64,000 nt of DNA, taken from the IMG/VR virus record IMGVR_UViG_3300010403_000705, positions 62,001 to 126,000 of that record. One strand, written 5' to 3'. Under the pieces are notes generated by a model, which made no database searches, was not told where the DNA came from, and was given only the letters and a program-made list of their open reading frames with translations. The translations under genes were made by a program, and so were the position numbers. Positions 2 through 61,938 of the stretch are shown here, one piece after another (within the stretch, counting starts at the first letter, position 1; the number at the start of each line of letters is the position of its first letter).

Positions 2-730
2 TTAATTAATTGTATTGGTAAAACTGGCGTACCCAATGTAGATTGGTGTGAATCTAATAAAGAAATTACTGCTACCACTAATACTGCACTTCCAATCTTA
101 TTGGCTGAAAAATGCAGCAAAAAATCAGTACATCTAATAAATATAGGTTCTGGATGTATTTATTTCGGAAAATCCTCTAATATTTATCTTGGTTCGAGTC
201 GAATAGAACATTCAGCTTCTGATATTGGTTGGAAAGAGAATGATTTTGCTAATCCAAAATCATTCTATTCTAGAACCAAATACGCTTGTGATTTAGTTTT
301 AGAGGATATGCCTCATGTAACTACTTTAAGAATTCGAATGCCTATATCAGAAAAAAATCATCCTAGAAATCTAATTAATAAATTAATAGGATATAAACAA
401 ATTATTGATATCCCTAATTCAGTTACTTTTATCAAAGATTTACAGAACTGCGTACAATGGTGTATTGAAAATAATAAAAGCGGTATTTTTCATGTTACTA
501 ATCCACAACCTTTAAGTGCAGTTCAAATTATGATGGAGTACAAAAAGTATGTTCCAGAACATACTTTTGAAGTTATTACCGAGCAACAATTAGATAATTT
601 AACTATTGCAAAAAGATCTAATTGTATATTAAATACGGATAAGTTAAGAGAAGCTGGGTTCGAAATGACACCATCACATGATGCACTTTCCTATTGTATG
701 GCTAAATATATTTTAAATAAAAATTTTTAA
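2..730 (+). CDS. NDP-4-keto-6-deoxyglucose 3,5-epimerase/4-reductase (RmlD/NRS-ER-like), 5' truncated by window edge
   Basis: Frame is open from base 2 (LINCIGKTGVPNVDWCE...). The GKTGxPNVDWCE, GSGCIY, SFYSRTK (YxxxK) and LRIRMPI motifs are typical of NRS/ER-type rhamnose synthesis SDRs. Confidence 0.85.
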   Translation, partial: LINCIGKTGVPNVDWCESNKEITATTNTALPILLAEKCSKKSVHLINIGSGCIYFGKSSNIYLGSSRIEHSASDIGWKENDFANPKSFYSRTKYACDLVLEDMPHVTTLRIRMPISEKNHPRNLINKLIGYKQIIDIPNSVTFIKDLQNCVQWCIENNKSGIFHVTNPQPLSAVQIMMEYKKYVPEHTFEVITEQQLDNLTIAKRSNCILNTDKLREAGFEMTPSHDALSYCMAKYILNKNF

Positions 731-43839: not shown

Positions 43840-44595
43840 ATGTACAGTAAAATTATAGAATCGTGTCAATTTTTGTTACATAATTATCCAGCAGCTCAAG
43901 AATGTAAATATTATTTAGATTCTAGATTATCTTTACAAAGTCAGCATAAATTCCAATTTGGATATTTTCCAAATTTATCTAATTTATCTGCTTTGGTATC
44001 TTTAATCGGAGAAGATATACTTAAAGAGAATAAAATGTTTTATTCTAAAGAAATTAAAGATTCTTTATACCCTAGAACAATAAATTTTTCATATTTTGAT
44101 GATTATCCTTTAATAATGCCCTTCAAGGATGCTTATGGAAATATAATTGCTATTGTAGGTAGGTCTTTATTGTCTGATGCGGAAAGAAAAAATAAAAATA
44201 TATCTAAATATAAAAACACTGTATTTACTAAAGGTAATTATTTGTTTGGTATATTTGAAAACAAACAATCTATTATAAAAAATAATATAGTATATATAGT
44301 AGAAGGACAGTTTGATGTTATTAAAGCATACGAAAAAGGAATGTATAATGTAGTCGGTTTAGGAAGTTCTAATATGACTGCTTATCAATTTTCTGTTATC
44401 AGCAGATACACAAATAATATAGTACTTTTATTAGATAATGATGAAGCTGGAGAAAAAGGCAGGAAACGTATCATGGATAAATTTAGCCAATACGCTAATA
44501 TTCAAAATTTCTATTTACCAGACAATTATAAGGATATGGATGAATTTTTATCTACAAATAGTTATGAAGATTTATCTTTTATTATTAAGAGTTAA
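43840..44595 (+). CDS. dnaG: DnaG-type primase catalytic/TOPRIM domain without zinc-binding domain
   Basis: YLDSR, LIMPF, GRSL, SKYKN, IVEGQFDV, LDNDEAG, KDMDE. Confidence 0.9.
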   Translation: MYSKIIESCQFLLHNYPAAQECKYYLDSRLSLQSQHKFQFGYFPNLSNLSALVSLIGEDILKENKMFYSKEIKDSLYPRTINFSYFDDYPLIMPFKDAYGNIIAIVGRSLLSDAERKNKNISKYKNTVFTKGNYLFGIFENKQSIIKNNIVYIVEGQFDVIKAYEKGMYNVVGLGSSNMTAYQFSVISRYTNNIVLLLDNDEAGEKGRKRIMDKFSQYANIQNFYLPDNYKDMDEFLSTNSYEDLSFIIKS

Positions 44596-44606
44596 AGGAA
44601 ATATTT

Positions 44607-44774
44607 ATGCCACCTATTGTTGATTCTATAGAAGACATTGAAATACATAAAAAACACATTGATAACGATCAGTCAGAAACTTGTGATTTATGTTGGATGG
44701 AAATTCCTTTTACAAAAATAGAACTTTTTATCATTAGCGAAAATTTAGATGAAGGACATTGTTATGAATGGTGA
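44607..44774 (+). CDS. small hypothetical protein missed by ORF track (55 aa)
   Basis: AAAGGA RBS; MPPIVDSIEDIEIHKKHIDNDQSETCDLCW...GHCYEW. Confidence 0.5.
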   Translation: MPPIVDSIEDIEIHKKHIDNDQSETCDLCWMEIPFTKIELFIISENLDEGHCYEW

Positions 44775-45048
44775 GTTTAATTTAAATGATAGCCAAGGGT
44801 TATTTTTAGAATTAGTATCTGGATGTAAATTAATGAAACTAATTGGTGGGGTTTGGTGTACTTCTAATAAAAAATCTCACGAAATAGCAGAAAAATTAAT
44901 TTCCAAAGGATGGTTGATTGAAACTACGACCAAATATTTTAGTATTTCAGGAAATGATAGAAGTTTTGAGTTAACTGAAAAAGGTATGGAAAAAACTATA
45001 GGTATACAGGTTTCTGAAATTGAACCAATAATAGACAGTAGCATATAA
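44749..45048 (+). CDS. small winged-helix-like protein
   Basis: EKLISKGWLI...FELTEKG (wHTH wing motif). Confidence 0.5.
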   Translation: MKDIVMNGEFNLNDSQGLFLELVSGCKLMKLIGGVWCTSNKKSHEIAEKLISKGWLIETTTKYFSISGNDRSFELTEKGMEKTIGIQVSEIEPIIDSSI

Positions 45049-45202: not shown

Positions 45203-45646
45203 ATGGTTGAAAAAAGAACTAATCGATCAGATCGCTACCAGTGGGTACTTTTGGAGACAGTTTGTTCAAATGATATGATGGAAGCGTTTTCCAACGAAGA
45301 AAGTATTTATAACAGATTAAATCCCTTTCAATATAGTGAAGATTTAATGAATTTAGAAGATCAATTAAAAAAAGAATTTTGGCGAGTTGTAGAAACTTTA
45401 TTAACTCCTAGACAAAAAGAGGTAATTAAACTATATGCAGATGGCTATACACAAATGGAAATAGCTAAAATGTTAAATGTTAATCAGAGTTCAATTACTA
45501 AATCTTTAAATGGAAATGTTGATTATAAAAATGGAAAAAAAATATATGGCGGAGCTCGTAAGAAGATTAGAAAGATAATAGAAAATGACGATAAAATTAA
45601 AGAGATCTTGAAAAAAATGGATGAGGTTCGTGAATCAAGATGGTAA
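45203..45646 (+). CDS. sigma-70 region 4/LuxR-type HTH transcription factor
   Basis: LTPRQKEVIKL..DGYTQMEIAKMLNVNQSSITKSL. Confidence 0.8.
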   Translation: MVEKRTNRSDRYQWVLLETVCSNDMMEAFSNEESIYNRLNPFQYSEDLMNLEDQLKKEFWRVVETLLTPRQKEVIKLYADGYTQMEIAKMLNVNQSSITKSLNGNVDYKNGKKIYGGARKKIRKIIENDDKIKEILKKMDEVRESRW

Positions 45647-49482: not shown

Positions 49483-50238
49483 ATGAACAAGAATGCTTTA
49501 AAAAAAATATTGGACCATCCAGATAAAGATGAAATTATATCTAAATTAGTTATTGGTATTCCGTCTAAAAGTATACATGATTGGTTAGAATCTAAATATA
49601 CCAATATAAATGAGGCAAAATTTGTTATTGCGGAAAAGTCCATTAAATCTTTTAAAGATAATTATTTAGATCTTTATAGCATCATTCAGGAAGATTTAAT
49701 AAAAACCAAATCAGCATTAATAAATAATACTCAAGATAATCTGCAACTTTCTATTCAAAATCTGCCAACATATAAAAATATTATTTTAAAATCTGCCGAA
49801 GAAGAGTTAGATATTAGGCAAGTTATTAAAAGAATGGTTGTGGGATTAGAAACACGTTTCTCACAAGTATTCGATGAAATACAAGAAGATCCGCGAAATA
49901 TTAATACTAGAGTGGATAGATTAGTAATTGAATATGCGGAAGTTATAAGTAATTTATTAGATAAGTGTCATAAATTTACAGAGCAGCCAGCAAATCAAGT
50001 AATTCAACATAATGTTACTTTACAAGTAGTAGATCAGCATATTTCTGTATTTCATGATGTGATTAAAGAAGTTTTGTCACAAATGGATTTAGAAACTTCT
50101 TTATATTTTATGGAAGTTTTTAATGAAAAAATGGCTAAATTAAAAGCTCCTGATAAAGATATGCCTATTAGTTCAGAAATCAGATTAGCAGAAGCTAAAT
50201 TACTTAATGAAACAATTAACAAAAAAATCAATGAGTGA
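49483..50238 (+). CDS. hypothetical helical protein, possible terminase small subunit
   Basis: N-terminal HTH-like HPDKDEIISKL..G...I..WL then coiled coils; lies upstream of terminase/portal. Confidence 0.35.
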   Translation: MNKNALKKILDHPDKDEIISKLVIGIPSKSIHDWLESKYTNINEAKFVIAEKSIKSFKDNYLDLYSIIQEDLIKTKSALINNTQDNLQLSIQNLPTYKNIILKSAEEELDIRQVIKRMVVGLETRFSQVFDEIQEDPRNINTRVDRLVIEYAEVISNLLDKCHKFTEQPANQVIQHNVTLQVVDQHISVFHDVIKEVLSQMDLETSLYFMEVFNEKMAKLKAPDKDMPISSEIRLAEAKLLNETINKKINE

Positions 50239-52088
50239 ATTTTATGACAAGTACTAAACACAAACCAGAATTAAAACCTGATATACCATATTCTGAAATT
50301 GTACATAGTACTCGTGTACCAGTAGAAGATGAAATCTTAAAAGATCCTGATGTTGCTGGAAAAATTGATAAATTATTAAATTTTTTTAATGAAACAGGAA
50401 TAAGGTATGGGGATTTTGATATTGATCCTGAGCAGGATCCACTAAAAGGGCTGAGAAGAACTGACACTTATAATAAAAAAGCTTATCCTAACACAGATTA
50501 TTATGTACATATTCCTGGACAGCATAACACTGAGAAATGGTTACAAGCAGTTAAAGAAGTTTATTATAAAGAAAGAAATGGATCTAATCGTGTATTAGCT
50601 ATTAGACAGGCTACTAATGGTTGGAATCCTATGGAAACTTATGATTTTTTGAATTGGTTAAGATATTATGAAGGTGCTACACATTTAAAATATAAGTTTG
50701 CTCAATTATGGTATGAAAACGGAGCTCCTGGATATTTTCTTCATGTTAAACCAGATGCCAAAAAAGAAGAGCCTTCTGTTGAAGGAAAAGATATTGATAT
50801 GGCACGAGACGCTATTTCTAACGAAATGTCTTCATCAGAAAAAAAACACATAATAGAGAAACAGAGAAACAAAATTGTTGGAAGGCTAGATTCTGCAGAA
50901 AAATTACTAAGGACACGTGATGGTCAAGTTTTTGCAGGAAAAGAATTTGAAACATTATTGGAAGCTATTTATCAATTAAAGAAAAAGCTACAAATGGTAA
51001 ACAAAATTAGCACTTCTACAAAAATATATGATGATATGATTGTAAGAGAAGCTAATATTTTATCCAAAAAAGGTTTTGTTAAAGCGGGAAATTTATTGTT
51101 ATCATTATCACAAGCTAATAATCCTCCTCCTGAAGGTTTGGGTAACACTGTTAACAAATCACAAATATCGTTAACTCCAGTATCACCAGTACCCCCGCAA
51201 CAGGGCGCTGGTTCGGCAGGCGGCTTACCTTCTATGGGACCAGGTATACCTCAAACTCTGCCAGAAAATTCATCTAGTGAACTGCCGCCAAAAGGAATAA
51301 GTGAATTCTTAGAGAATTTAGATGTTGGGTCAAAAGATAATAATTCTTCAGATACATTGGAGATACAAGATACTTTAGATATTAATGACCTTGAAGAAGA
51401 AGTTCTCGTTACCCATGCACAAGATGTTAAACCACCTACTGTGCCAATAAACACTCCTTCTAATAAAACAGATAAAATAGATAAGCCATTGGAAATCAAA
51501 CAAAATTCACCAGAAGTAAATGGTGACAAATTATCTCCACAAAATAGAGATTTTGATAACATGATTGATTCTCTTTTTTCACACATCAGTATTAATGATA
51601 TTGTAGCGAAATTAGAAGATATTTCTAAAATATATAAAACTAGAGAAATACCGAGACAATTATCTATCATAGATATGATGTTAGATAGTAAAGGGTTAGC
51701 GGCATATTTCCCTTCATTGTCGGAAGCCATTAATAAAGCGCTAGAATCTAATAACTATATCTCTACCCGCATAGATGATATTTTAGCTAAACTAACTGGT
51801 GGTATAGAAGGTAGAGATCTTGATTTGAAGGGTGAAATGACCCCAAAAACAAATTCTCCAGAAATTGAAAATCTGAAACAAAATTTGAAATTACAAGAAG
51901 ACAAAGAAAAGGCTAGAAAGAAATTAAGAAAAGAGCAATCAGATCAAGAATTAGATTTATCTAATTCGCCTAAGGAAACTCCTGAAATAGATATTGAAGA
52001 AGATCTAAGTCGACCTCTCCCTTCTAAAGAACAAACTGCTAGTCCTCCAGCCGCTCCTGTCGCTAAACCAACACCAGTTACTAAATAA
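50235..52088 (+). CDS. hypothetical protein with Pro-rich linkers, probable head/scaffold-associated protein
   Basis: 617 aa; several K-x-A sites; low-complexity linkers. Confidence 0.6.
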   Translation: MNFMTSTKHKPELKPDIPYSEIVHSTRVPVEDEILKDPDVAGKIDKLLNFFNETGIRYGDFDIDPEQDPLKGLRRTDTYNKKAYPNTDYYVHIPGQHNTEKWLQAVKEVYYKERNGSNRVLAIRQATNGWNPMETYDFLNWLRYYEGATHLKYKFAQLWYENGAPGYFLHVKPDAKKEEPSVEGKDIDMARDAISNEMSSSEKKHIIEKQRNKIVGRLDSAEKLLRTRDGQVFAGKEFETLLEAIYQLKKKLQMVNKISTSTKIYDDMIVREANILSKKGFVKAGNLLLSLSQANNPPPEGLGNTVNKSQISLTPVSPVPPQQGAGSAGGLPSMGPGIPQTLPENSSSELPPKGISEFLENLDVGSKDNNSSDTLEIQDTLDINDLEEEVLVTHAQDVKPPTVPINTPSNKTDKIDKPLEIKQNSPEVNGDKLSPQNRDFDNMIDSLFSHISINDIVAKLEDISKIYKTREIPRQLSIIDMMLDSKGLAAYFPSLSEAINKALESNNYISTRIDDILAKLTGGIEGRDLDLKGEMTPKTNSPEIENLKQNLKLQEDKEKARKKLRKEQSDQELDLSNSPKETPEIDIEEDLSRPLPSKEQTASPPAAPVAKPTPVTK

Positions 52089-52091
52089 TAT

Positions 52092-52865
52092 ATGAAACTT
52101 CGTGAATTACTTTTTCAAATGAAAGAAGTACAAAAGAAAGCAGATACTTCTGAACCTTATATTTGTGGTGGTACACCTAGAGATAAGTATTTGAAAAGAT
52201 TAGATAATATTTCTGATTTAGATATTACCACTGGAGATAAATCTGTAGACTATCTATCTCAGATGTTTGCAGAAGAATTAAAGAAAAAATATAATGTGGA
52301 CAGAAAATCTATGGAAGATGGACATAGTACTATTTTTATTGGTAACTTAAAAATAGATTTTTCATCAAATTTTAATGTACCTAATATAGATAAGATTTTG
52401 TTTAAGAAAGGTATTAATAAACCTACTGAAATGCAGAAAGAAATGTTTAGTAGAGATTTTACTTGCAATGCATTGTTACTATCACTAGATTTAGTTAATA
52501 TTATTGATCCAACACATAAAGGATTTATTGACATCAAGGAAAAAAAAATTAAAACATGCTTAAGTCCAGACATTACTTTAACTACAAATAGAAATAGGGT
52601 AGTAAGAGCTGTATATTTGGCTTCTAAATTAGGTTTTGATATTGATAGTTCAATAATAGATTATGTACGAAAAAATCCAAATACTGTAAGAATAGCTACA
52701 GAAAAATCATTAACAGATAAATTAAATGAAGCTTTTAAAAGAGATGGTGATCGTGCTAGTTATTTTCTTACCAAAATGGAGTTATGGAATTACGTACCTA
52801 TTACAGAAATAATGTATCCATTTTATAATGTACATACCAAAGGTAAATCAAATGTCACAAAATAA
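52092..52865 (+). CDS. CCA-adding/poly(A) polymerase family (class II) nucleotidyltransferase, short form
   Basis: CGGTPRD...DLDITT, SRDFTCNAL, IIDP...G..DI, R.VRA..L..KLGF. Confidence 0.85.
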   Translation: MKLRELLFQMKEVQKKADTSEPYICGGTPRDKYLKRLDNISDLDITTGDKSVDYLSQMFAEELKKKYNVDRKSMEDGHSTIFIGNLKIDFSSNFNVPNIDKILFKKGINKPTEMQKEMFSRDFTCNALLLSLDLVNIIDPTHKGFIDIKEKKIKTCLSPDITLTTNRNRVVRAVYLASKLGFDIDSSIIDYVRKNPNTVRIATEKSLTDKLNEAFKRDGDRASYFLTKMELWNYVPITEIMYPFYNVHTKGKSNVTK

Positions 52866-53562
52866 AAAAGCATATTTCCAAGGCACTGAAGAGCCAACGC
52901 CAAAAAAGAAAAAATATAAATCAGAAAAAGCCATATTAGTACAACCTCGCTTTAAGGAACCATTTTATAGTAATTATGATTTATATGATACAGAGGGTCT
53001 AGATGGAAATACAAAATTAGGTCCAGGTGCTGGATGGCATAGCATGCATAAATATAAGAGTATCAAAGAATTTAGGGACGCAAAAAGAAAGCGTATGCAA
53101 GATAAATACAAAGCTGACGATTTTTGGATTGAAGATACAGCTTCTAACAGGAATCAGCGTATTGAAAAAATGAAAATAAGAGCCGAAATTGTTAAAAGTT
53201 TAATTAAGATAGCTATAGATTTTCCTATAGATGATCAAATAAATTCGGGCTCTATTACAGGTGATTCTGGATGCTATACTGACGGAGCACAACTAGGCGG
53301 TGAATTAGATGAATATTTAATGAAAAATGATTTTGAAGAAAAATCGCCAGATCAATTAAATTTTGGTAGAGATTATATTGAAGATCAGTACCCTAATTCC
53401 AAATTAAACAAATTACAAGAAAAATATATTCAACCAACAGAGCCGTCTCTATATGGCTTGCCAGACGGCGTAGATATAAAAGAAGATTTAAATATAGCTG
53501 GTATAGAACAATCACAGTATGGAGTAACAGATTTTGGAAATACATTTTACAACGAAATATAA
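52852..53562 (+). CDS. hypothetical protein, morphogenesis cluster
   Basis: ATG 52852 with AAAGG RBS; NKKAY and LIKIA motifs. Confidence 0.6.
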   Translation: MSQNKKAYFQGTEEPTPKKKKYKSEKAILVQPRFKEPFYSNYDLYDTEGLDGNTKLGPGAGWHSMHKYKSIKEFRDAKRKRMQDKYKADDFWIEDTASNRNQRIEKMKIRAEIVKSLIKIAIDFPIDDQINSGSITGDSGCYTDGAQLGGELDEYLMKNDFEEKSPDQLNFGRDYIEDQYPNSKLNKLQEKYIQPTEPSLYGLPDGVDIKEDLNIAGIEQSQYGVTDFGNTFYNEI

Positions 53563-53631: not shown

Positions 53632-54549
53632 ATGTCTCTAAAATCAATGGCTCAAGAATTAATAGTAATAGATCCTACTTCATTTAATCATGAAGCGCCA
53701 CCACAAGATTCTGTAATTCCTATTGTTCCATTAGAAGTATCTACTTTTAACGATTCTCCTAATGAAGAACTACAAGTATCTGATAGTGGAGACATAGTAA
53801 TTGAGTTAGGAGACTTACCAGGTGCCCCTCCAGGGACCACAGATCCTAAAGAAGAGGAAGAATCTGTTTTAGAAGTAACAGATGAATCTGCAGCTAGTGA
53901 TGAAGAGGACGCAAAAAAATCTAAGAAAAATGAAAAATGGGATTGGGAATCCCATGGACCACATGGTTTTATTGCGTGGATTAAAACAAGAATTGATGAC
54001 GTGCCGAAACATTCAGGATATGATTCGGCAGGTCTTGAAAGAGCCATGTCTTACATGGAAAGGCTAGATAATGAAATTTCTAGAGCTATGAGAATGGATT
54101 TAGATGGTGAATTAGATGCTAATAAAATAGAAGAAGTAAGATCAAAAATAGATGAAGGATTATCTAGTTTACATGCTAGGTTAGACAAAGTTAAAAAAAG
54201 TACTAAAGCTCGTCGCAAGAAAAAATCTGATTACACAGAAGAAGGTATAATTAAGGAAGGGCAAAAGATAACAGGTGTACAAGGTGTTTTTGTTACCGTA
54301 CCTTTATTGATTTCTGGAATTGGAAGAATATGTATAAATAGTATGGTATCTGCTGGTCATGACATTGAAGATGTTTATGCAGAACAGGTAAAAAAATGGG
54401 GATTGAATGATAGAGAAAAAGCAGAAGTAAGATGGTTTTTATATGATTTAGGATACCCTATGCGTGGAGATAGAGGCTACATGCCAGAAGAAGATATAGA
54501 TACTTCATCATCAAATAATTTCGATTGGGCAGCCAATTATAAAGGATAA
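53632..54549 (+). CDS. hypothetical protein, morphogenesis cluster
   Basis: 305 aa; acidic N-terminal half; IIKEGQ motif. Confidence 0.65.
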   Translation: MSLKSMAQELIVIDPTSFNHEAPPQDSVIPIVPLEVSTFNDSPNEELQVSDSGDIVIELGDLPGAPPGTTDPKEEEESVLEVTDESAASDEEDAKKSKKNEKWDWESHGPHGFIAWIKTRIDDVPKHSGYDSAGLERAMSYMERLDNEISRAMRMDLDGELDANKIEEVRSKIDEGLSSLHARLDKVKKSTKARRKKKSDYTEEGIIKEGQKITGVQGVFVTVPLLISGIGRICINSMVSAGHDIEDVYAEQVKKWGLNDREKAEVRWFLYDLGYPMRGDRGYMPEEDIDTSSSNNFDWAANYKG

Positions 54550-54552
54550 GTT

Positions 54553-55206
54553 ATGTCAAAATATACAAGATACCAATCCACTATATCACGCCATTCAGAT
54601 GCATATATAGATGAAGATAATTGGATTAATAAACTAGAAAAATCTTTGAAAAAAGATGCTGTGCAGCCAAAAAGAGTAGATCAATCTATATTTGAACAAA
54701 TTACTACTATTATGAATGGTAAATCTAAATATACTTCAGTCCAAGCAGCAGTAGATGATATGAAAAATAGAAGTGGATTGACAGCTTACCTAGATAAAAT
54801 AAATAAAATTTCTAATGACGAAAAACACAATAATAAAAAAATAGCATCAGATGACAATAAAGTTATAGATAAAAAAATAACAATGATTCCTATTGTTTTT
54901 TCAAAATGTCCTAAAATACAGCAAACGGCAGCCAACCATATAAAAACTACCAGAGGTAACTTGCCTGTACCTGCTATTATCGAGAAAATAAAATCAATTC
55001 ATCATAATGATGTTTCTGATGCTAACGATTGGGAAGACGATAAATTAATTAAACAAATTAGTAGAATGAATTTAGAAGAAAAAAGTAAAAATGGGATTAC
55101 TGAGCAAGATTATAATAATTTAGGTATGGCTGATGATAGTAATGATATGGAAATTGATCCATCAAATACCGACGCCTTTCATGCTTTAAACCCTGTTAAA
55201 TTATAA
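54553..55206 (+). CDS. hypothetical protein, morphogenesis cluster
   Basis: 217 aa; NKKIAS motif. Confidence 0.65.
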   Translation: MSKYTRYQSTISRHSDAYIDEDNWINKLEKSLKKDAVQPKRVDQSIFEQITTIMNGKSKYTSVQAAVDDMKNRSGLTAYLDKINKISNDEKHNNKKIASDDNKVIDKKITMIPIVFSKCPKIQQTAANHIKTTRGNLPVPAIIEKIKSIHHNDVSDANDWEDDKLIKQISRMNLEEKSKNGITEQDYNNLGMADDSNDMEIDPSNTDAFHALNPVKL

Positions 55207-55849
55207 TTTCTGATATATTTTTTAATAGAGATATTTTGTTATAATTACAGTTAAAACATAAAACTTGAAATTTCAGATTATGAGGAAATTTATTTTTAAT
55301 TAGCCATCTATAAAATTTTATTCCATTTTTGCATTTGATTGGTGTGTTGTTGATATCACTATATAATGTTAATTTTTCTATTTTGTCTTCTTGGCACTCC
55401 ACACACTGTCCACCATAATTATCTATAACCTTTTTTTTATCTCTGAAGGCATATTTATCTTTATAAATTTTATTTTTACTACAATTATGGCACAATACTT
55501 GATATCCATCTTTTATGATCGGATTATTATAAAGCCACTCATAAACATTATTTATTTTTTTATCATGATTATTATATACTATAGTTAATTTGTAATAATC
55601 ATCTTCGTGGCATTTAACACAACTATTACCATAAGAGAAAATAACAGCACTTTTTCTAAAATGATATCTTGCTGCTTGTTTTCTATTATAATTTATATCT
55701 GTTTTATGATATTGTCTACTATATTGTTTAAAACATGTGGTACAAATATAATTACTCCTTTTATGTAAATATTTTAACCAGTTGTTTTCAGTAAGCATAA
55801 TACCACATTTGATACAACATTTTAGACTAGATTTTTTCTGTGACTTCAT
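55196..55849 (-). CDS. HNH-like homing endonuclease with duplicated domain, possibly degenerate
   Basis: Two repeats YG..CV.C.ED....LT...YxWL......YQVLC.NC; antisense insertion before terminase. Confidence 0.75.
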   Translation of the reverse strand: MKSQKKSSLKCCIKCGIMLTENNWLKYLHKRSNYICTTCFKQYSRQYHKTDINYNRKQAARYHFRKSAVIFSYGNSCVKCHEDDYYKLTIVYNNHDKKINNVYEWLYNNPIIKDGYQVLCHNCSKNKIYKDKYAFRDKKKVIDNYGGQCVECQEDKIEKLTLYSDINNTPIKCKNGIKFYRWLIKNKFPHNLKFQVLCFNCNYNKISLLKNISEIII

Positions 55850-55876
55850 ATCAAGGCATATATCATTATTCTTACT

Positions 55877-57745
55877 ATGAATGATGATAAAAAATTATTT
55901 GAAAGATTAAAAAACGATTTATTAAATATTGATCCTGTAAGTTGGACAGAGAGATATCTTACGTTAGATGGAAAACCATTTCGTTTAACAGGAAATGGTT
56001 TTAAGCCTTTTGCAGATATTTATAGATATATTGGAATTAAAGCATTAGAACCAAACGCTATGCCAATTATCCTAGTTAAGGGTCGTCAGGTTGGAGCAAC
56101 TACTATGGCAAGTGCATTAGAAATGTACTTCATGGGATCTGGTATATTCGGTAATGGTGAAAAACCTCCAATTAGAATTATTCATGCTTTTCCACAATTA
56201 GAATTAGCAGCAGCTTATTCTAAAACAAAATTAAATCAAATGATTTCCTCTTCTTTACCATTGCCTGGAGAAGATAATAAAAAAAATAATAAAACTAAAT
56301 CATATATGCAATCACTGTTAGACCAAACAAGTGCCACCAATGATTCTTTACATTTTAAACAATTTATTGGAGGAAACCATATTTGGGTAGAATCTACTGG
56401 ACTAGATGCTGATCGAATCATGGGACGTACGGCTGATGTTATTTTTTTTGACGAAGTTCAAAAAACAACAAGTCAGGCTATTGGGAATGCATTAAAAATT
56501 TTAACAACTTCTAAATACGGAAAAATAAATAAAGGCGTTCAAGTGTATTTTGGAACTCCACGTCGAAAAGGATCTGATTATCATAAGATGTGGCAAAGCT
56601 CTACTCAACAATATTTTTACCTTGGTTGTGAAAAATGTAACAAGCATTTTCCATTGTATACCCCTGGAACTGATGAATGGGAAAATATTTGGATTCATGG
56701 GTACATAGTTAAATGTACGCATTGTGGGTATGAGCAAGATAAAAGGCAAGCAGCAGAAAGAGGAAAATGGGTTGCATTAAAATCAGAAGCAAATGATGAT
56801 TGTAAAATGGTAGGTTTTCATATTAATCAATTATATATGCCTACATTTACAAAAGAAGATTTAATTAATGAAAAACCAGGTAATCATCCTATTAACACTG
56901 AACGAGTCTATAAAAATGAAGTTTTGGGAGAGTTTTATCAAGGAGATGCCTCTCCAATTACACCAGAAGAGATTAGAGAATTATGTGGAGAACCAGGGAG
57001 AAAATTTAGAGCCAGAATTGAACCTAGTAAAGAACAAATAATAGTACTAGGTATAGATTATGGTGCTAGAGCAGATTTAGAACAATTAGCTAATCCAGAC
57101 AAAGTAAAATTATCAGGTCAATCGTATAGCACCGCTGTTGTTTTAATGGCAACTGGTCCAAACTTGTTATCTATTGAATTTGCTACAAAATTCAAACGTA
57201 ATGATATGGAAAGTAAAAAAGGTTTGATTGATCAGATTATGAGACAATATAGTATACAGTTAGCAATAGGAGATATTGGTTTTTCACAAGATTTTTCGAC
57301 TATGTTACATACTTCATATGGAGACAGGTACTTAGTTTCCAGAGCTCATAATAAGGTAAATGGATATGTTAAATTTTCTGCTGATGCTTACCCAAAAGAG
57401 ATAGTTTTTGAAAGAGATCATTATATCGGTGAGTTGTATGAACAAATGAAAAAAGGAAATATAAAATTTCCTTTTGGAGATTATGAAAAATTAGCTTGGT
57501 TAATAGAACATTGTGCTAGTATGGAAATTAAACCATCCATGTCTAAATATGGGGATCATAGTATTCACTATGTAAAAGGCGGTACACCTAATGATGGTTT
57601 CATGGCTTTATTAAACGCTTACTTAGCTTATAAATTCGTTATAACTAAAGGTTTTACTAGTAATAATCCATTATTGCAACAACAAGTTTTTAAAGAAGTG
57701 AATAAACCATTAGCACTTACTGGATATATAAGCCGTAAATTTTAA
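55877..57745 (+). CDS. terminase large subunit (lambda GpA-like)
   Basis: KGRQVGATT Walker A, FFDEVQ Walker B, GTP motif, CEKC...CTHC Zn motif, GFHINQL, NEVLGEFY, nuclease GIDYG. Confidence 0.88.
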   Translation: MNDDKKLFERLKNDLLNIDPVSWTERYLTLDGKPFRLTGNGFKPFADIYRYIGIKALEPNAMPIILVKGRQVGATTMASALEMYFMGSGIFGNGEKPPIRIIHAFPQLELAAAYSKTKLNQMISSSLPLPGEDNKKNNKTKSYMQSLLDQTSATNDSLHFKQFIGGNHIWVESTGLDADRIMGRTADVIFFDEVQKTTSQAIGNALKILTTSKYGKINKGVQVYFGTPRRKGSDYHKMWQSSTQQYFYLGCEKCNKHFPLYTPGTDEWENIWIHGYIVKCTHCGYEQDKRQAAERGKWVALKSEANDDCKMVGFHINQLYMPTFTKEDLINEKPGNHPINTERVYKNEVLGEFYQGDASPITPEEIRELCGEPGRKFRARIEPSKEQIIVLGIDYGARADLEQLANPDKVKLSGQSYSTAVVLMATGPNLLSIEFATKFKRNDMESKKGLIDQIMRQYSIQLAIGDIGFSQDFSTMLHTSYGDRYLVSRAHNKVNGYVKFSADAYPKEIVFERDHYIGELYEQMKKGNIKFPFGDYEKLAWLIEHCASMEIKPSMSKYGDHSIHYVKGGTPNDGFMALLNAYLAYKFVITKGFTSNNPLLQQQVFKEVNKPLALTGYISRKF

Positions 57746-57802: not shown

Positions 57803-59626
57803 ATGGCTATAAATAAATCTACAAAAAAATGGGTTGGACCATCCAATTCAGAACAGTTTTTACAAAAAAGATCTACTGTTCCACAAGTAAGTGCCCTAAT
57901 GGCTCAAGGTATTTCGAGTGTTAGAAGAGATATTTTATCTGAAGAAGTCGATCAAGGATTTTTTAGAGACGGATCTGGTCCTTCTAATAAACAGAATGAT
58001 TTAACACATAATTCTCATGTCACCGCATCAGTAGGTGTAAAAAAATACGCACAAGTATTAAGTGGAGGTGGTAATTATCGTGGTGGTAATGGAGATACTG
58101 TTAAACAAACGCCAGAAGTATATTCTCCACTGTGGCTTAATAGTAACTTAAACCTTCCTAGAGATAGAGCAACTATTAATGCATGGTGTCGTAGTTTTTA
58201 TGCTTTAAATCCCTTCGTACATAACGCAATTAATTTACATAGTACATATCCAATTAGTAAACTAAATATTAAATGTTCGAATAAAGATATTGAAAAATTC
58301 TTCAATGATATGAGTGAAGAAATAGATTTAATGAATATTTGCGTACAAATAGCTCAAGAATATTGGTTACTAGGTGAAGCATTTGTATATTCTGAATTAG
58401 ATGAAAGTAAAGGCAAATGGAGTAGGTTATTGATTCAAAATCCTGATCATATGCTTGTTAAACGTACTGTAGTGACCACTGACCCTATAATTATGTTGCG
58501 TCCAGATGAAAATTTAAAAAACATTGTATTTTCTAATAAACCAACAGACATTGAACAACGTAAACAACTAAATCAATATATTATAGATTCTGTTAAACGT
58601 GGAGAAAATATCACACTAGATAATTTTCATGTATCTCATTTAGCAAGAAGAATTAGCCCGTATGAAATAAGAGGCACTGGTCTTCCTGTTTGTATATTTA
58701 GACAATTAATGTTATTTGATAAGTTAAGAGAATCTAAATATGCACAGGCTGATAATATGATTAATCCATTAACTCTAGTAAAAATTGGCACAGATGGACC
58801 TGAAGGCTTACATCCAACATTTGGTGATTTAGAAGCATGGAGAAATATTTTTGAAGAAGCACAATATGATAAAGATTTTAAAATCTTTACACACGCTGGT
58901 ATTGATGTGCAGAGAGTGGGGTATGGTCAAGGCATATATGATATCTCTGGAGATATCACTCAAATAATTAAAGAAATTTATGTTGGCTTACAAGTTCCGC
59001 CAGTATTGATGGATGGTGGTGCAGATACAACTTATGCTAATGGTGGTGTGGCGCTTGATGTATTAAGACAACGATACATGCAGTTCCGTAATATGATGTC
59101 TGCTTGGTTGAAAAGACAAATATTTGCTCCAATATCAAAAATTCAGGGATTTTATGATTATTCTGGTGGAGAAAAACAACTTATAGTACCAGAGATTGAC
59201 TGGAATCATATGTCATTATTTGATGCTGGTGATTATATTAATACTTTAGTTACTCTTACACAAGGTCAAGATGATCAAAAACGTGCTTCTTTACACACAT
59301 TGTATCGTTCTATGGGTCTTGAATTTGAAGATGAAAATAGAAAAATACGTAAAGAAGCAATTCAAAATGCAATTGTAAAAAAAGAAAAAATGGCTTTAGA
59401 AGCATTAGATTTAAATTCACTAAGAGCTTTAGATGAAGAAGAGGAAATTCCTCAAGCACAAACTCAACAGCCAGGAACAGAAAACGCAGTACCGGGTCAA
59501 ATGCCTTCTCCTACTAGTATGCCTGGATTAGATTTAGGTGCACCTCCTGGTATGTCAGCTTCTCCAATGCCTTCAGGACCAGCATCAGGACCTACTGATT
59601 CTGCACCTCCTCCTGTTCCCGCATAA
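57803..59626 (+). CDS. portal protein
   Basis: Directly after terminase; FYALNPFVHNAINLHSTYP, EYWLLGEAF, ISPYEIRGT; Pro-rich C-terminal tail. Confidence 0.8.
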   Translation: MAINKSTKKWVGPSNSEQFLQKRSTVPQVSALMAQGISSVRRDILSEEVDQGFFRDGSGPSNKQNDLTHNSHVTASVGVKKYAQVLSGGGNYRGGNGDTVKQTPEVYSPLWLNSNLNLPRDRATINAWCRSFYALNPFVHNAINLHSTYPISKLNIKCSNKDIEKFFNDMSEEIDLMNICVQIAQEYWLLGEAFVYSELDESKGKWSRLLIQNPDHMLVKRTVVTTDPIIMLRPDENLKNIVFSNKPTDIEQRKQLNQYIIDSVKRGENITLDNFHVSHLARRISPYEIRGTGLPVCIFRQLMLFDKLRESKYAQADNMINPLTLVKIGTDGPEGLHPTFGDLEAWRNIFEEAQYDKDFKIFTHAGIDVQRVGYGQGIYDISGDITQIIKEIYVGLQVPPVLMDGGADTTYANGGVALDVLRQRYMQFRNMMSAWLKRQIFAPISKIQGFYDYSGGEKQLIVPEIDWNHMSLFDAGDYINTLVTLTQGQDDQKRASLHTLYRSMGLEFEDENRKIRKEAIQNAIVKKEKMALEALDLNSLRALDEEEEIPQAQTQQPGTENAVPGQMPSPTSMPGLDLGAPPGMSASPMPSGPASGPTDSAPPPVPA

Positions 59627-60954: not shown

Positions 60955-61938
60955 ATGGGTGCCAGAGTTAAACGTGTTAAAACAAATGTATCTACAGAGC
61001 AAATAACGCAAGCTGTTATTAATGCATGGGTAGAATTATTTCATGTTGTACCCTCTAAAGAACAAATAGCAATGGTTTTAGCTCAAAATGCATTAGAAAC
61101 TGGTCATAGAAAAAGTATGTGGAATTATAATATTGGTAATATTACGACAGATGGTAAAGGCGGATATGACTTTTTTGATGATTTACCAACAGACGAACAA
61201 GTGAAACCTGGTGTATGGAAGAAAATGAGTCTTAAATATAGAGCATATCCTTCTTTAAAAGAAGGTATGCAAGATTATTTAAAATTTATAAGTGGAAAAA
61301 AATATGCCAATGCTTGGCAGCATATACTACATCCTAATCCAGCAGCTTTTTCTAAAGCCTTAAAACAGTCTGGTTATTACACAGCAAATGAGGCTCCATA
61401 CACAAAAACTTTAACAAAATTATATAATCAATATTCGAAATCTAAGATTGATAAAATACAACCTGTTTTCGATAAAAATGTTATACCCCATAATGATAAC
61501 CAATTAAATCACATTTTAGATGATTATTTACAAATGGTAGCAGCTTCCGAAAAAAATAATAAAAAAATATACAAAAAACTATTACCATTTAATAATATAT
61601 TAGTAAAAATAAATTCTATCGATTATAATAATTCTATAGAATTTGCCAGGATATTATGTTCGGCACTAGAAGAAGAATTAATGGCAACTGCATATACACA
61701 TACAGATGGTAACTCTATAGAAATAGAATGTGTTATTCCTGGTCCTGCACAAGATTGTCTATATGCTACGATGCAACTAACTAGTTCAGTAGCAGATGCT
61801 TTTAGAGTTGCCACTAAAAAAATTGGTAGTATAGATGTAACTACTCAGTGTACGCTAAACAAAAAATCTTCTTATAAACAAATAGGATTCAAATCTGCTG
61901 AATGTCAACATAGAAAATTTTTAATGAAATTTATTTGA
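60955..61938 (+). CDS. GH73/FlgJ-like glucosaminidase fused to unknown C-terminal domain
   Basis: AQNALETG, NIGNI, YRAYPSL.EG..DY, LK.SGYYTA. Confidence 0.8.
   Translation: MGARVKRVKTNVSTEQITQAVINAWVELFHVVPSKEQIAMVLAQNALETGHRKSMWNYNIGNITTDGKGGYDFFDDLPTDEQVKPGVWKKMSLKYRAYPSLKEGMQDYLKFISGKKYANAWQHILHPNPAAFSKALKQSGYYTANEAPYTKTLTKLYNQYSKSKIDKIQPVFDKNVIPHNDNQLNHILDDYLQMVAASEKNNKKIYKKLLPFNNILVKINSIDYNNSIEFARILCSALEEELMATAYTHTDGNSIEIECVIPGPAQDCLYATMQLTSSVADAFRVATKKIGSIDVTTQCTLNKKSSYKQIGFKSAECQHRKFLMKFI

What the first reader, a model, noticed from the sequence alone, without database searches (positions are those of the whole stretch)
52092..52865. Short CCA/poly(A)-type nucleotidyltransferase with altered templating motif inside the head gene cluster
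Seen: the class II NTase core (GG..RD, DxD, RDFTxNA) is only 257 aa. The base-selecting EDxxR motif reads TNRNR (52584-52598) and RRD reads SRD. The gene is flanked by K-x-A morphogenesis genes. Established: EDxxR residues form the amino-acid template for C/A selection in CCA-adding enzymes, and phage CCA enzymes can repair tRNA 3' ends. Inference: altered nucleotide specificity, and possibly a late or virion-delivered RNA-repair or RNA-tailing counter-defence enzyme.
Basis: partly seen in the sequence, partly recalled or inferred. Interest (0 to 1): 0.6.

Follow-up and report, generated by a model that had tools for sequence, protein, structure and literature searches.

The report
Minimal phage CCA-type nucleotidyltransferase, altered template
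A 433-kb soil phage carries a stripped-down relative of the enzyme that builds the CCA tail of tRNAs: it keeps the catalytic residues, lacks the tRNA-gripping half and one base-reading residue, and is coupled or fused to a disordered partner just upstream of the DNA-packaging genes, so it is probably an RNA-end-tailing enzyme of untested specificity.

Summary
ORF 52092-52865 (+, 257 aa) is a class II nucleotidyltransferase (Pfam PolyA_pol, 46 bits against a cut-off of 23). Its model (pLDDT 96) matches only the head and neck of CCA-adding enzymes (Z 20; BstCCA residues 3-240). GGxxRD, DxD, a third carboxylate and RDFTxN are intact. TNRNR (52584-52598) aligns with EDxxR, and SRD with RRD.

The change is selected, not decay. 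In 120 relatives at 67-84% identity, N166 is kept in 117 and N168 and R169 in all. SRD marks a phage-only short family (188 clusters at E<=1e-10). Basal members keep xDPxR; the query's clade has xNxNR. The Arg is almost always kept.

The protein scores far below the curated CCA, A-adding and PcnB models.

The gene sits in a fixed block, HTH ... g617, NTase, partner, g305, g217, TerL, portal, conserved down to about 35% identity. The partner's ATG lies 11 nt before the NTase stop. The two are one ORF in 17 of 65 distinct relatives. Distant relatives fuse the NTase to peptidoglycan hydrolases or an RNA-repair phosphatase.

Best reading: an active minimal RNA 3'-end nucleotidyltransferase, not a canonical CCA enzyme, co-expressed with packaging genes. 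Altered specificity and virion delivery remain untested.

The parts
52092..52865 (+). Minimal class II (CCA/poly(A)-type) nucleotidyltransferase, 257 aa, head and neck domains only
   Evidence: ORF. PF01743 at 46.4 bits. AF2 model pLDDT 95.9. Foldseek top hits are all class II CCA-, A- and CC-adding enzymes or PAP. VIA Z 20.2 to TmCCA residues 17..291 and Z 18.2 to BstCCA 1miv_A residues 3..240 of 395.
52167..52223 (+). Motif A: G26-G27-T-P-R30-D31 ... D42-L-D44 (NTP and metal binding)
   Evidence: G26, G27, R30, D42 and D44 are invariant in the 94-sequence family alignment A1 and in 121 of 121 close relatives.
52350..52373 (+). Strand K-I-D89-F-S-S-N-F carrying the third catalytic carboxylate; the BxA motif that follows it in CCA enzymes is absent
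   Evidence: D89 is nearly invariant and aligns with the E of ELEFVGAR in canonical members. TmCCA has three catalytic carboxylates (PMC3925840).
52440..52469 (+). Motif B variant E117-x-x-S120-R121-D122-F-T-C-N126 (canonical DxxRRD)
   Evidence: Aligns with RRDFTINA of 6ibp. SRD is present throughout the short family, RRD only in the outgroup. RRD is the ribose-recognition motif (PMC2910056).
52584..52607 (+). Motif D variant T165-N166-R-N168-R169-V-V-R172 in place of E-D-x-x-R-x-x-R
   Evidence: phmmer alignment to PDB CCA enzymes; conservation in relatives; distribution on the family tree.
52852..53562 (+). Downstream partner, 236 aa from the ATG at 52852, predicted mostly disordered, with conserved short motifs (AYFQG, QPRFKEPFY.NYDLY, GPGAGWH..YKS, IDFPIDD, LNFGRDY, LYGLPDG)
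   Evidence: Found next to the NTase in 82 of 83 loci. Fused to it in one ORF in 17 of 65 distinct relatives. Alignment A2. The Atlas's own model has pLDDT 0.43. In the fused AF2 model the partner part is mostly below pLDDT 70.
52852..52865 (+). 14-nt overlap: partner ATG (52852) to NTase TAA (52863-52865), with an AAGG Shine-Dalgarno-like site at 52840-52843
   Evidence: Sequence. The same arrangement, with the ATG 11 nt before the stop, occurs in most of the 38 distinct loci where the partner is in the +1 frame.
50235..52088 (+). g617, conserved upstream neighbour of unknown function; its stop is 3 nt before the NTase ATG
   Evidence: ORF. Syntenic in 82 of 83 loci and in the distant relative L085. 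No family or PDB match.
53632..55206 (+). g305 and g217, conserved genes of unknown function between the partner and TerL
   Evidence: ORFs; synteny in 81 and 79 of 83 loci; no family hits.
55877..57745 (+). Terminase large subunit
   Evidence: PF05876 GpA_ATPase E 3.9e-15; PHROG 675 E 1.9e-61.
57803..59626 (+). Portal protein
   Evidence: PHROG 16240 E 9e-51.

Best explanation
The gene encodes a catalytically competent, minimal class II ribonucleotidyltransferase, consisting of the head and neck of a CCA-adding or poly(A)-polymerase-type enzyme. It belongs to a phage-specific family that has lost the tRNA-binding body and tail domains, the BxA/flexible-loop element and the first Arg of RRD. 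In the clade holding this phage, the Asp that pairs with the amino group of C or A has been replaced (consensus xNxNR), while the templating Arg and all catalytic residues remain under strong purifying selection. The enzyme most likely adds one or a few nucleotides, without a template, to RNA 3' ends. tRNA or tRNA-like acceptor ends are the obvious candidates. Base choice would be set mainly by the retained Arg, as in poly(A) polymerase, which favours A and/or C. It would not run the C-C-A programme of a true CCA-adding enzyme. It works together with the largely disordered protein encoded immediately downstream, which is translationally coupled to it here and covalently fused to it in about a quarter of relatives. 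It is co-transcribed with the terminase and portal block, so it is probably made late. Shown: fold, motifs, conservation, family structure, synteny, coupling and fusion. Inferred: activity, RNA substrate, nucleotide choice, timing.
For: Fold and family. Catalytic residues G26, G27, R30, D42, D44, R121, D122 and R172 are invariant, and D89, N126 and R169 are at least 90% conserved, across 94 sequences down to 25% identity. Close-clade conservation of T/S-N-R/K-N-R. Family size, about 702 proteins by word search and 188 clusters at E<=1e-10, mostly 240-260 aa. Tree: the outgroup has RRD plus (E/D)DPxR, the short family has SRD, basal clades have xDPxR and the query's clade has xNxNR with Arg retained. 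No body or tail: BstCCA 3..240 of 395; the fused-partner model adds no helical bundle. PAP precedent that only the Arg is needed for A-specificity: PMC2532741. Asp is irreplaceable for CCA or A addition in the human enzyme: PMC11784652. Coupling and fusion with the partner: (at least 6 fusion or fission changes on the tree). Operon context and synteny conserved to about 35% identity. RNA-repair link in the family and genome: HAD_SAK fusion, RtcB and RNA ligases.
Against: No biochemical data exist for any member. Without body and tail, affinity for tRNA should be low, and nothing shows that the partner binds RNA. The complex prediction gave no verdict. Position 166 varies (N, S, Q, M, H, K, D) across the wider derived clade. 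That fits a relaxed templating role, but it could also mean a different substrate pocket altogether. The gene does not sit with the genome's RNA-repair genes. No RNA-seq run holds the locus, so timing is inferred from gene order only.
Confidence: 0.55

Rival explanations
1. It is a bona fide tRNA CCA-adding or CCA-repairing enzyme in miniature. It would mature the phage's own CCA-less tRNAs or restore 3' ends trimmed by host nucleases or defence systems, with Asn166 still accepting the H-bond from the C or A amino group.
For: All nearest solved structures are CCA-, CC- or A-adding enzymes. The genome carries 39 predicted tRNA genes, about 12 of which lack an encoded CCA, and this is its only PF01743 gene. 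RtcB and several RNA ligases show investment in RNA repair. Jumbo-phage CCA enzymes are interpreted this way in the literature (PMC7824862).
Against: There are no body or tail domains, which recognise the acceptor and T-arm helices (PMC3925840). There is no BxA motif or flexible loop, which are needed for the C-to-A switch (PMC2910056, PMC2532741). The Asp is replaced, and Asp was irreplaceable under selection for CCA or A repair although Asn was offered (PMC11784652). Scores lie far below the NCBIfam equivalog cut-offs: 54.9 against 290 and 42.6 against 438.8. Most phage tRNA genes already encode CCA.
Confidence: 0.2
2. It is a cargo protein packaged in the capsid and injected with the DNA, either with its partner or as the fusion. 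It would act on host or phage RNA 3' ends at the very start of infection, as counter-defence or host shut-off by tailing tRNA ends.
For: The position in the TerL, portal and head block is fixed across a deep phage lineage. In distant relatives the NTase at the same syntenic position is fused to Peptidase_M15_3 and a phage tail lysozyme domain (P0207, P0246); by general phage knowledge, such domains in large multidomain proteins within structural modules are usually virion-associated. The partner is long, disordered and motif-rich. An SLT-domain protein and a 1226-aa protease-domain protein lie in the same module. An NTase-like phage protein is toxic to its host (PMC7291057).
Against: There is no proteomic evidence and no cultured relative. 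There is no N-terminal propeptide: M1-K-L is conserved and is part of the first helix of the fold. The partner's motifs occur in no other protein of the genome, so there is no shared targeting signal. Conserved synteny in a vertically inherited core does not prove a functional link.
Confidence: 0.15
3. The acceptor is not RNA. The enzyme would nucleotidylate DNA ends in connection with packaging, or a protein or small molecule, as other Pol-beta-fold transferases do.
For: The tRNA-binding domains are lost and ribose-recognition motif B is altered (ExxSRD instead of DxxRRD) (PMC2910056). The gene is adjacent to terminase genes. The head domain alone also resembles aminoglycoside nucleotidyltransferases and Pol beta at Z 6-7.5.
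Against: The neck domain with the R169/R172 helix, which forms the NTP base pocket of RNA-tailing class II enzymes, is retained and conserved. The full-length structural match to CCA and PAP enzymes (Z 14-20) is far stronger than to any non-RNA transferase (Z 7.5 or less). The Arg next to Asp in motif B is invariant.
Confidence: 0.07
4. It is a catalytically dead, structural or regulatory remnant of a CCA enzyme.
For: Domains and canonical motif residues have been lost.
Against: Every metal-binding and triphosphate-binding residue is invariant across a family spanning 25-84% identity. The model is very confident. Hundreds of intact copies exist.
Confidence: 0.03

Closest known systems
Class II CCA-adding enzymes (e.g. 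Thermotoga maritima 3h3a, Geobacillus/Bacillus stearothermophilus 1miv, Planococcus halocryophilus 6ibp)
   Same: Head and neck fold (Z 18-20, about 225 aligned residues, 19-21% identity). Shared GGxxRD, DxD, third carboxylate, RDFTxNA, and the R..R helix of motif D.
   Different: No body or tail (nothing beyond BstCCA residue 240). No BxA motif or flexible loop. ExxSRD instead of DxxRRD. TNRNR instead of EDxxR. Scores are 5-10 times below the curated equivalog cut-offs.
Bacterial poly(A) polymerase I (PcnB; 3aqk/3aql/3aqm)
   Same: Same catalytic core. In PAP only the Arg of EDxxR matters for A-selection and the flexible loop is dispensable (PMC2532741), which matches what this family has kept and lost.
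   Different: PAP has body and leg RNA-binding regions and an intact EDxxR. The structural match is weaker (Z 14-15). The TIGR01942 score is 33 against a cut-off of 306.
Aquifex-type A-adding and CC-adding enzymes (1vfg, 4wby/4wc2, 3wfo-3wfs)
   Same: Split or partial activities show that class II enzymes can be restricted to one nucleotide. CC-adding enzymes naturally lack the flexible loop. Z 17-20.
   Different: They keep EDxxR and the full body and tail; this protein keeps neither.
Other short phage 'tRNA nucleotidyltransferases' (PHROG 24229, profile 245 aa) and the stand-alone CCA-enzyme head domain NP_344798.1 (PDB 2la3)
   Same: Truncated class II NTases without tRNA-binding domains; uncharacterised.
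   Different: The match to PHROG 24229 is weak (E 1.4e-7, C-terminal half only). 2la3 is a head domain alone (Z 6.6). Neither is known to carry xNxNR or the coupled partner.
Packaged, injected phage enzymes (T4 Alt, N4 virion RNA polymerase, P1 Dar proteins); comparison from general knowledge
   Same: If the virion-cargo reading is right, the logic is the same: an enzyme delivered with the DNA to act before phage genes are expressed.
   Different: No evidence of packaging here, and no RNA 3'-end nucleotidyltransferase is known among such cargo.

Membership tests
Class II nucleotidyltransferase superfamily (Pfam PF01743 PolyA_pol head domain) | Score above the Pfam gathering cut-off | tested here: met
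   46.4 bits against 23, residues 23-153 covering profile positions 2-125 of 126.
Class II nucleotidyltransferase superfamily | Motif A GGxxRD ... DxD plus a third catalytic carboxylate | tested here: met
   G26, G27, R30, D31, D42, D44 and D89; invariant or at least 90% conserved in A1.
Class II nucleotidyltransferase superfamily | Head and neck fold with the NTP pocket between them | tested here: met
   AF2 pLDDT 95.9. Z 20.2, rmsd 3.4 over 223 residues to 3h3a_A.
Class II CCA-adding enzyme | Motif D amino-acid template E-D-x-x-R | tested here: not met
   T165-N166-R-N-R169 aligns with E-D-A-L-R. Only the Arg is kept. No other EDxxR in the protein.
Class II CCA-adding enzyme | Motif B DxxRRD (ribose recognition) | tested here: not met
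   E117-M-F-S120-R121-D122. The first Arg is Ser throughout the short family.
Class II CCA-adding enzyme | BxA motif and flexible loop between motifs A and B (C-to-A switch) | tested here: not met
   The residues after D89 read F-S-S-N-F-N-V-P, with no basic-x-acidic motif. Residues 99-119 are modelled as two confident helices with pLDDT of 96 or more.
Class II CCA-adding enzyme | Body and tail domains that bind the acceptor and T-arm helices | tested here: not met
   The model spans BstCCA residues 3..240 of 395 and TmCCA 17..291 of 417. The partner is predicted disordered, not a helical bundle.
Class II CCA-adding enzyme | Curated equivalog models (NF009814, TIGR02692) | tested here: not met
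   54.9 bits against 290; 42.6 bits against 438.8.
Class II CCA-adding enzyme | Synthesises exactly C-C-A on tRNA 3' ends | not testable with these tools
   Needs an enzyme assay.
Poly(A) polymerase I (PcnB) | Curated models TIGR01942 and NF008634 | tested here: not met
   33.4 bits against 305.65; 17.1 bits against 702.
A-adding tRNA nucleotidyltransferase | Curated model NF041569 | tested here: not met
   18.3 bits against 1440.
Short phage NTase family defined here (SRD type, about 240-260 aa) | ExxSRDFT[CIV]N, K.DFSSNF, D-G-H hairpin, head and neck only, N-terminus at M1 | tested here: met
   All present. 84 clusters at E<=1e-30, and 325 viral contigs matched the ExxSRDFT[CIV]N pattern and were confirmed by tblastn.
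Virion-packaged (injected) phage proteins | Detected in purified particles, or carrying a known capsid-targeting or processing signal | not testable with these tools
   No cultured relative. No shared motif with other proteins of the genome.

The most novel reading that the evidence does not exclude
The NTase, with its disordered partner or as the natural fusion, is a capsid-packaged cargo that is injected with the genome and modifies RNA 3' ends (host or phage tRNA acceptor ends) before any phage gene is expressed, using a remodelled xNxNR pocket with a nucleotide specificity different from C/A. That would be a new class of virion-delivered RNA-modifying effector, and the first natural class II enzyme with a rewritten amino-acid template.
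Probability: 0.12. Interest if true: 0.85.

Novelty: new variant of a known kind. Interest (0 to 1): 0.55.

Why it matters
Class II CCA-adding enzymes are the textbook case of a protein side-chain template (EDxxR) standing in for a nucleic-acid template. Laboratory selections say the Asp and Arg cannot be replaced. Here nature supplies hundreds of intact, strongly conserved enzymes that have dropped the Asp, the loop that switches C to A, and the whole tRNA-binding half, yet keep every catalytic residue. Assaying them would show what the bare head-neck core can do and whether xNxNR encodes a new specificity.

For phage biology, this is a hallmark gene of a widespread clade of soil huge phages. 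It is locked next to the terminase and repeatedly fused to a disordered partner, and in distant relatives to cell-wall hydrolases or an RNA-repair phosphatase. That makes it a concrete candidate for an RNA-directed takeover or counter-defence function tied to the virion module.

Tried and rejected
(1) Complex prediction of the NTase with the partner gave no verdict (score 0.00). This is not evidence either way.

(2) Can the partner supply a body/tail-like domain? The fused AF2 model (L029, 487 aa) gives the partner mostly pLDDT below 70 with only short helices. The Atlas's own model has pLDDT 0.43. The idea is rejected as unsupported.

(3) The conserved AYFQG at the junction as a general prohead-protease site: Y[FY]QG occurs once in all ORFs of at least 100 codons in the 433-kb genome. 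Rejected.

(4) The partner's short motifs as a shared capsid-targeting signal: each occurs only in the partner. No support.

(5) Programmed +1 frameshift joining the NTase and the partner: the conserved ATG with an SD-like AAAGG upstream, 11 nt before the stop, fits ordinary translational coupling. Not pursued further.

(6) Function of the neighbours: g617 profile against PDB sequences, and the Atlas, gave nothing. Pfam, PHROG and NCBIfam gave nothing for g541, g283, g236, g251, g617, g305, g217 and g411.

(7) hhalign of the partner profile against the C-terminal extensions of P0212 and P0207: no homology.

(8) Rfam on the whole window: no match. The promoter scan was at chance level.

(9) Sequencing runs: only the probable source soil metagenome holds the locus, and no RNA run does.

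(10) A search of the genome for PF05065 failed on the server, and PF07068 found nothing. The major head protein was found by PHROG instead.

(11) dNTP use inferred from SRD: I could not establish from the papers at hand which Arg of RRD contacts the 2'-OH, so no claim is made.
Full report
WHAT IS THERE

The window is bases 62001-126000 of a 432,844-bp virus record, which IMG/VR classes as a provirus and CheckV estimates at 97% complete. The record has 32.7% GC and carries 39 predicted tRNA genes, a tmRNA and a CUA-anticodon tRNA. The only public run that holds the locus is a soil metagenome.

The ORF at 52092-52865 (+) exists exactly as described: 257 aa, ATG start, TAA stop. It matches Pfam PolyA_pol (PF01743) at 46.4 bits against a cut-off of 23, and the PHROG 'tRNA nucleotidyltransferase' families 2244 and 24229.

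phmmer against all PDB sequences finds only class II CCA-adding, A-adding and CC-adding enzymes. In those alignments:
- S120-R-D-F-T-C-N-A lies under R-R-D-F-T-I-N-A.
- T165-N-R-N-R169 (nt 52584-52598) lies under E-D-A-L-R.
- V-V-R172-A lies under M-L-R-A.

The protein contains no other EDxxR.

FOLD

An AlphaFold2 model built on a 94-sequence family alignment is very confident (mean pLDDT 95.9, pTM 0.90). The top 46 Foldseek matches in the PDB are all class II enzymes (E down to 1e-11). The VIA re-alignment gave these matches:

| Target | Z | Model range | Target range |
|---|---|---|---|
| T. maritima CCA enzyme (3h3a_A) | 20.2 | 1-252 | 17-291 of 417 |
| B. stearothermophilus CCA enzyme (1miv_A) | 18.2 | 1-256 | 3-240 of 395 |

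The protein is therefore the head and neck only. The alpha-helical body and tail, which recognise the acceptor and T-arm helices of tRNA (PMC3925840), have no counterpart.

The segment between the third catalytic carboxylate (D89) and motif B also differs. It has no basic-x-acidic (BxA) motif and is modelled as two confident helices, not the flexible loop that CCA enzymes need to switch from C to A (PMC2910056, PMC2532741).

SELECTION, NOT DECAY

A word-indexed search found 702 relatives. The best 120 are 67-84% identical and almost all 244-260 aa long. Among these relatives plus the query (121 rows):
- G26, G27, R30, D42, D44, D89, S120, R121, D122, N126, N168, R169 and R172 are invariant; D31 is kept in 120 of 121.
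- Position 166 is N in 117 and S in 4.
- Position 165 is S, T or A in 113 of the 121.

An exhaustive HMMER search of 1.84 billion cluster representatives found 84 clusters at E<=1e-30 and 188 at E<=1e-10, again mostly 240-260 aa. Across a 94-sequence alignment reaching 25% identity, the metal-binding and triphosphate-binding residues remain invariant. A dead remnant is therefore very unlikely.

WHERE THE ALTERED TEMPLATE COMES FROM

The alignment and tree of 115 representatives show a clear pattern:
- The few long canonical-type members, used as outgroup, have RRD and (E/D)DPxR.
- The whole short family, a 98% supported split, has SRD.
- Its basal clades keep xDP(R/K)R.
- The subclade holding the query mostly has xNxNR (TNKNR, SNKNR, YNINR, LNTNR and similar). 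Some members carry S, Q, M, H, K or D at the Asp position.
- The final Arg is replaced in only 4 of the 115 rows, one of them inside the query's subclade.

So 'SRD' is a family signature, not a peculiarity of this gene. Loss of the templating Asp is a derived state of one subclade, coupled to a new conserved Asn two residues later.

WHAT THAT MEANS FOR SPECIFICITY

In TmCCA the Asp accepts the H-bond from the 4-NH2 of C or the 6-NH2 of A, and the Arg donates to N3 or N1 (PMC3925840).

In E. coli poly(A) polymerase, E211A and D212A leave A-specificity almost unchanged, while R215A gives random A, C and U incorporation (PMC2532741).

In the human CCA enzyme, a library offering E, D, R, N, K, S, G, T and A at all three template positions was put under selection for A repair or CCA repair. 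It returned variants only at the Glu position. The Asp and Arg were never replaced (PMC11784652).

Taken together, the phage enzyme is unlikely to carry out the canonical CCA programme. It may well retain an Arg-driven preference for A and/or C, as PAP does. A truly new specificity through the two Asn side chains is possible but unsupported.

The curated NCBIfam models agree that it belongs to none of the characterised subfamilies:

| Model | Score (bits) | Cut-off (bits) |
|---|---|---|
| CCA (NF009814) | 54.9 | 290 |
| CCA (TIGR02692) | 42.6 | 438.8 |
| PcnB (TIGR01942) | 33.4 | 305.65 |
| A-adding (NF041569) | 18.3 | 1440 |

THE PARTNER

The next gene starts at the ATG at 52852, not at the upstream ATG of the mechanical ORF list. 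It overlaps the NTase stop by 14 nt and has an AAGG site 8 nt upstream of the ATG. The same geometry, with the ATG 11 nt before the stop, recurs in most of the 38 distinct related loci where the partner lies in the +1 frame. This is classic translational coupling.

In other relatives the two genes form a single ORF of 447-783 aa. For example, the 561-aa P0121 was found letter for letter on five contigs; the three shown come from three separate sources, ENA, JGI and Logan. Among 65 distinct NTase sequences, 17 are fused. The tree needs at least six fusion or fission changes, four of them forced by well-supported branches.

The partner has these features:
- a conserved basic N-terminal region of about 100 residues (AYFQG[GGG]..NEPTP.KKKYKS..VQPRFKEPFYRNYDLY..GPGAGWH..YKS..EF);
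- a highly variable middle, which in some phages carries duplicated motifs or Zn-ribbon inserts;
- acidic and aromatic short motifs (IDFPIDD, DFEGK.P..LDFGRDY, LYGLPDG).

The partner has no Pfam, PHROG or NCBIfam match. It is predicted to be largely disordered (Atlas pLDDT 0.43). In the fused AF2 model only residues of about 311-330 reach pLDDT 85. It is therefore not a substitute body/tail bundle.

Recurrent fusion plus coupling is good evidence that the two act as a unit. What the partner contributes (RNA binding, localisation or regulation) is unknown.

CONTEXT

In 83 viral contigs of 59-81% NTase identity the gene order is fixed: primase, sigma-r4-like HTH, g151, g541, (g283), g236, g251, g617, NTase, partner, g305, g217, TerL, portal, g411, SLT-domain protein.

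The same block is recognisable around relatives of only about 35% identity:
- L094 (P0212): HTH ... NTase ... TerL.
- L085 (P0207): g151, g541, g236, g251, g617, NTase.

Within the window:
- g617 ends 3 nt before the NTase ATG.
- No + strand terminator-like site lies between g251 and TerL, apart from one weak site inside g305.
- TerL (55877) and portal (57803) follow.

Beyond the window lie a 1226-aa protein with a head-maturation-protease domain and the major head protein, the latter about 26.7 kb downstream of the NTase.

'Inside the head gene cluster' is therefore fair as 'at the upstream edge of the packaging and head module'. The immediate neighbours are of unknown function, and I could not verify the 'K-x-A' label.

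FUSIONS ELSEWHERE IN THE FAMILY

Pfam scans of long family members show three kinds of fusion:
- NTase + Peptidase_M15_3 + Phage_lysozyme2 (P0207, 783 aa), and NTase + Peptidase_M15_3 (P0246). In L085 this fusion occupies the syntenic slot of NTase plus partner.
- NTase + HAD_SAK, the phosphatase of 'Swiss-army-knife' RNA-repair proteins (P0249).
- NTase + PcfJ-like + partner (P0123).

Other extensions have no match and are not homologous to the partner.

The hydrolase fusions hint at a virion-associated protein. The HAD fusion hints at RNA 3'-end repair. Each rests on one or two cluster representatives.

THE GENOME'S RNA TOOLKIT

This NTase is the only PF01743 gene in the genome. The genome also encodes RtcB and four to six RNA-ligase-family proteins at distant sites. 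Of the 39 predicted tRNA genes, 27 already encode CCA.

VERDICT

The most probable reading, with confidence of about 0.55, is an active minimal RNA 3'-end nucleotidyltransferase of a phage-specific family, acting with its coupled or fused partner and co-expressed with packaging genes. It uses an Arg-centred base pocket rather than the canonical Asp/Arg template. It works like a CCA or poly(A)-type tailing enzyme but fails the membership tests for CCA-adding, A-adding and PcnB enzymes.

Canonical CCA repair (0.2) and virion delivery (0.15) remain live. A non-RNA acceptor (0.07) and a dead protein (0.03) are unlikely.

It is a new variant of a known kind, of moderate to good interest. It offers a natural experiment on the protein template of class II enzymes and is a hallmark gene of a widespread huge-phage clade.

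Noticed in passing
G000:C1:58637-58710 (3.3 kb upstream of the window start); also 55645-55997: ARAGORN predicts a tRNA with a CUA anticodon (it would read TAG) and a tmRNA with tag ANDNAFVPMAQAA just upstream of the window. The genome has 39 predicted tRNA genes in all, most in a cluster at 401-423 kb. Genes in the window, including TerL and portal, read through intact under table 11, so I named no alternative code.
   Followed up: partly
window 55196-55849 (-): An HNH-endonuclease-like ORF (PHROG 4234, E 9e-6; Cys-rich) lies on the opposite strand, wedged between g217 and TerL. In many relatives the g217-to-TerL distance equals the length of g217 alone (e.g. L029), so this looks like a mobile insertion present in only some genomes.
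   Followed up: partly
L002:11372-13702 (TerL, 776 aa) compared with window 55877-57745 (622 aa): The terminase large subunit of a related phage is about 150 aa longer than the window's, which suggests an insertion (intein or endonuclease domain) in TerL.
   Followed up: no
L005, L007, L008, L022 (between the NTase and the partner): In four relatives a 530-580-nt insert separates the NTase stop from the partner start, and the partner is then in the +2 frame. This may be a small inserted gene.
   Followed up: no
L086:727-4407 and L086:14840-15853 (genome 126727-130407 and 140840-141853): A 1226-aa protein matches a head-maturation-protease family at residues 106-215 (PHROG 18299) and is otherwise unassigned. 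The major head protein (PHROG 2522, E 8e-76) lies 10 kb further on.
   Followed up: partly
G000:C1:363250-364554; 44508-44990; 306806-307393; 332783-333349; 416374-416892: The genome encodes RtcB (E 5e-91) and at least four RNA-ligase-family (PF09414) proteins scattered across it. This is an unusually rich RNA-repair toolkit.
   Followed up: partly
window 45203-45646 (+), and the same slot in L002 and L094: A small sigma-70 region-4-like HTH protein heads the conserved block that ends in TerL. It may be a phage sigma-like or late-transcription factor for this module.
   Followed up: no
Alignment A2, e.g. L012, L024, L042, L058, L079: Some partner proteins carry one or two extra copies of the 'GPNFDYGKGLY.NM.KYKSV.DF' unit, a duplicate of the N-terminal GPGAGWH..YKS..EF motif, or CxxC...CxxC inserts in the variable middle.
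   Followed up: no
window 60955-61938 (+): An endolysin/SLT-like protein (PHROG 3513; PF01464 in relatives) lies two genes after the portal, inside the structural block. It is a candidate virion-associated peptidoglycan hydrolase.
   Followed up: no
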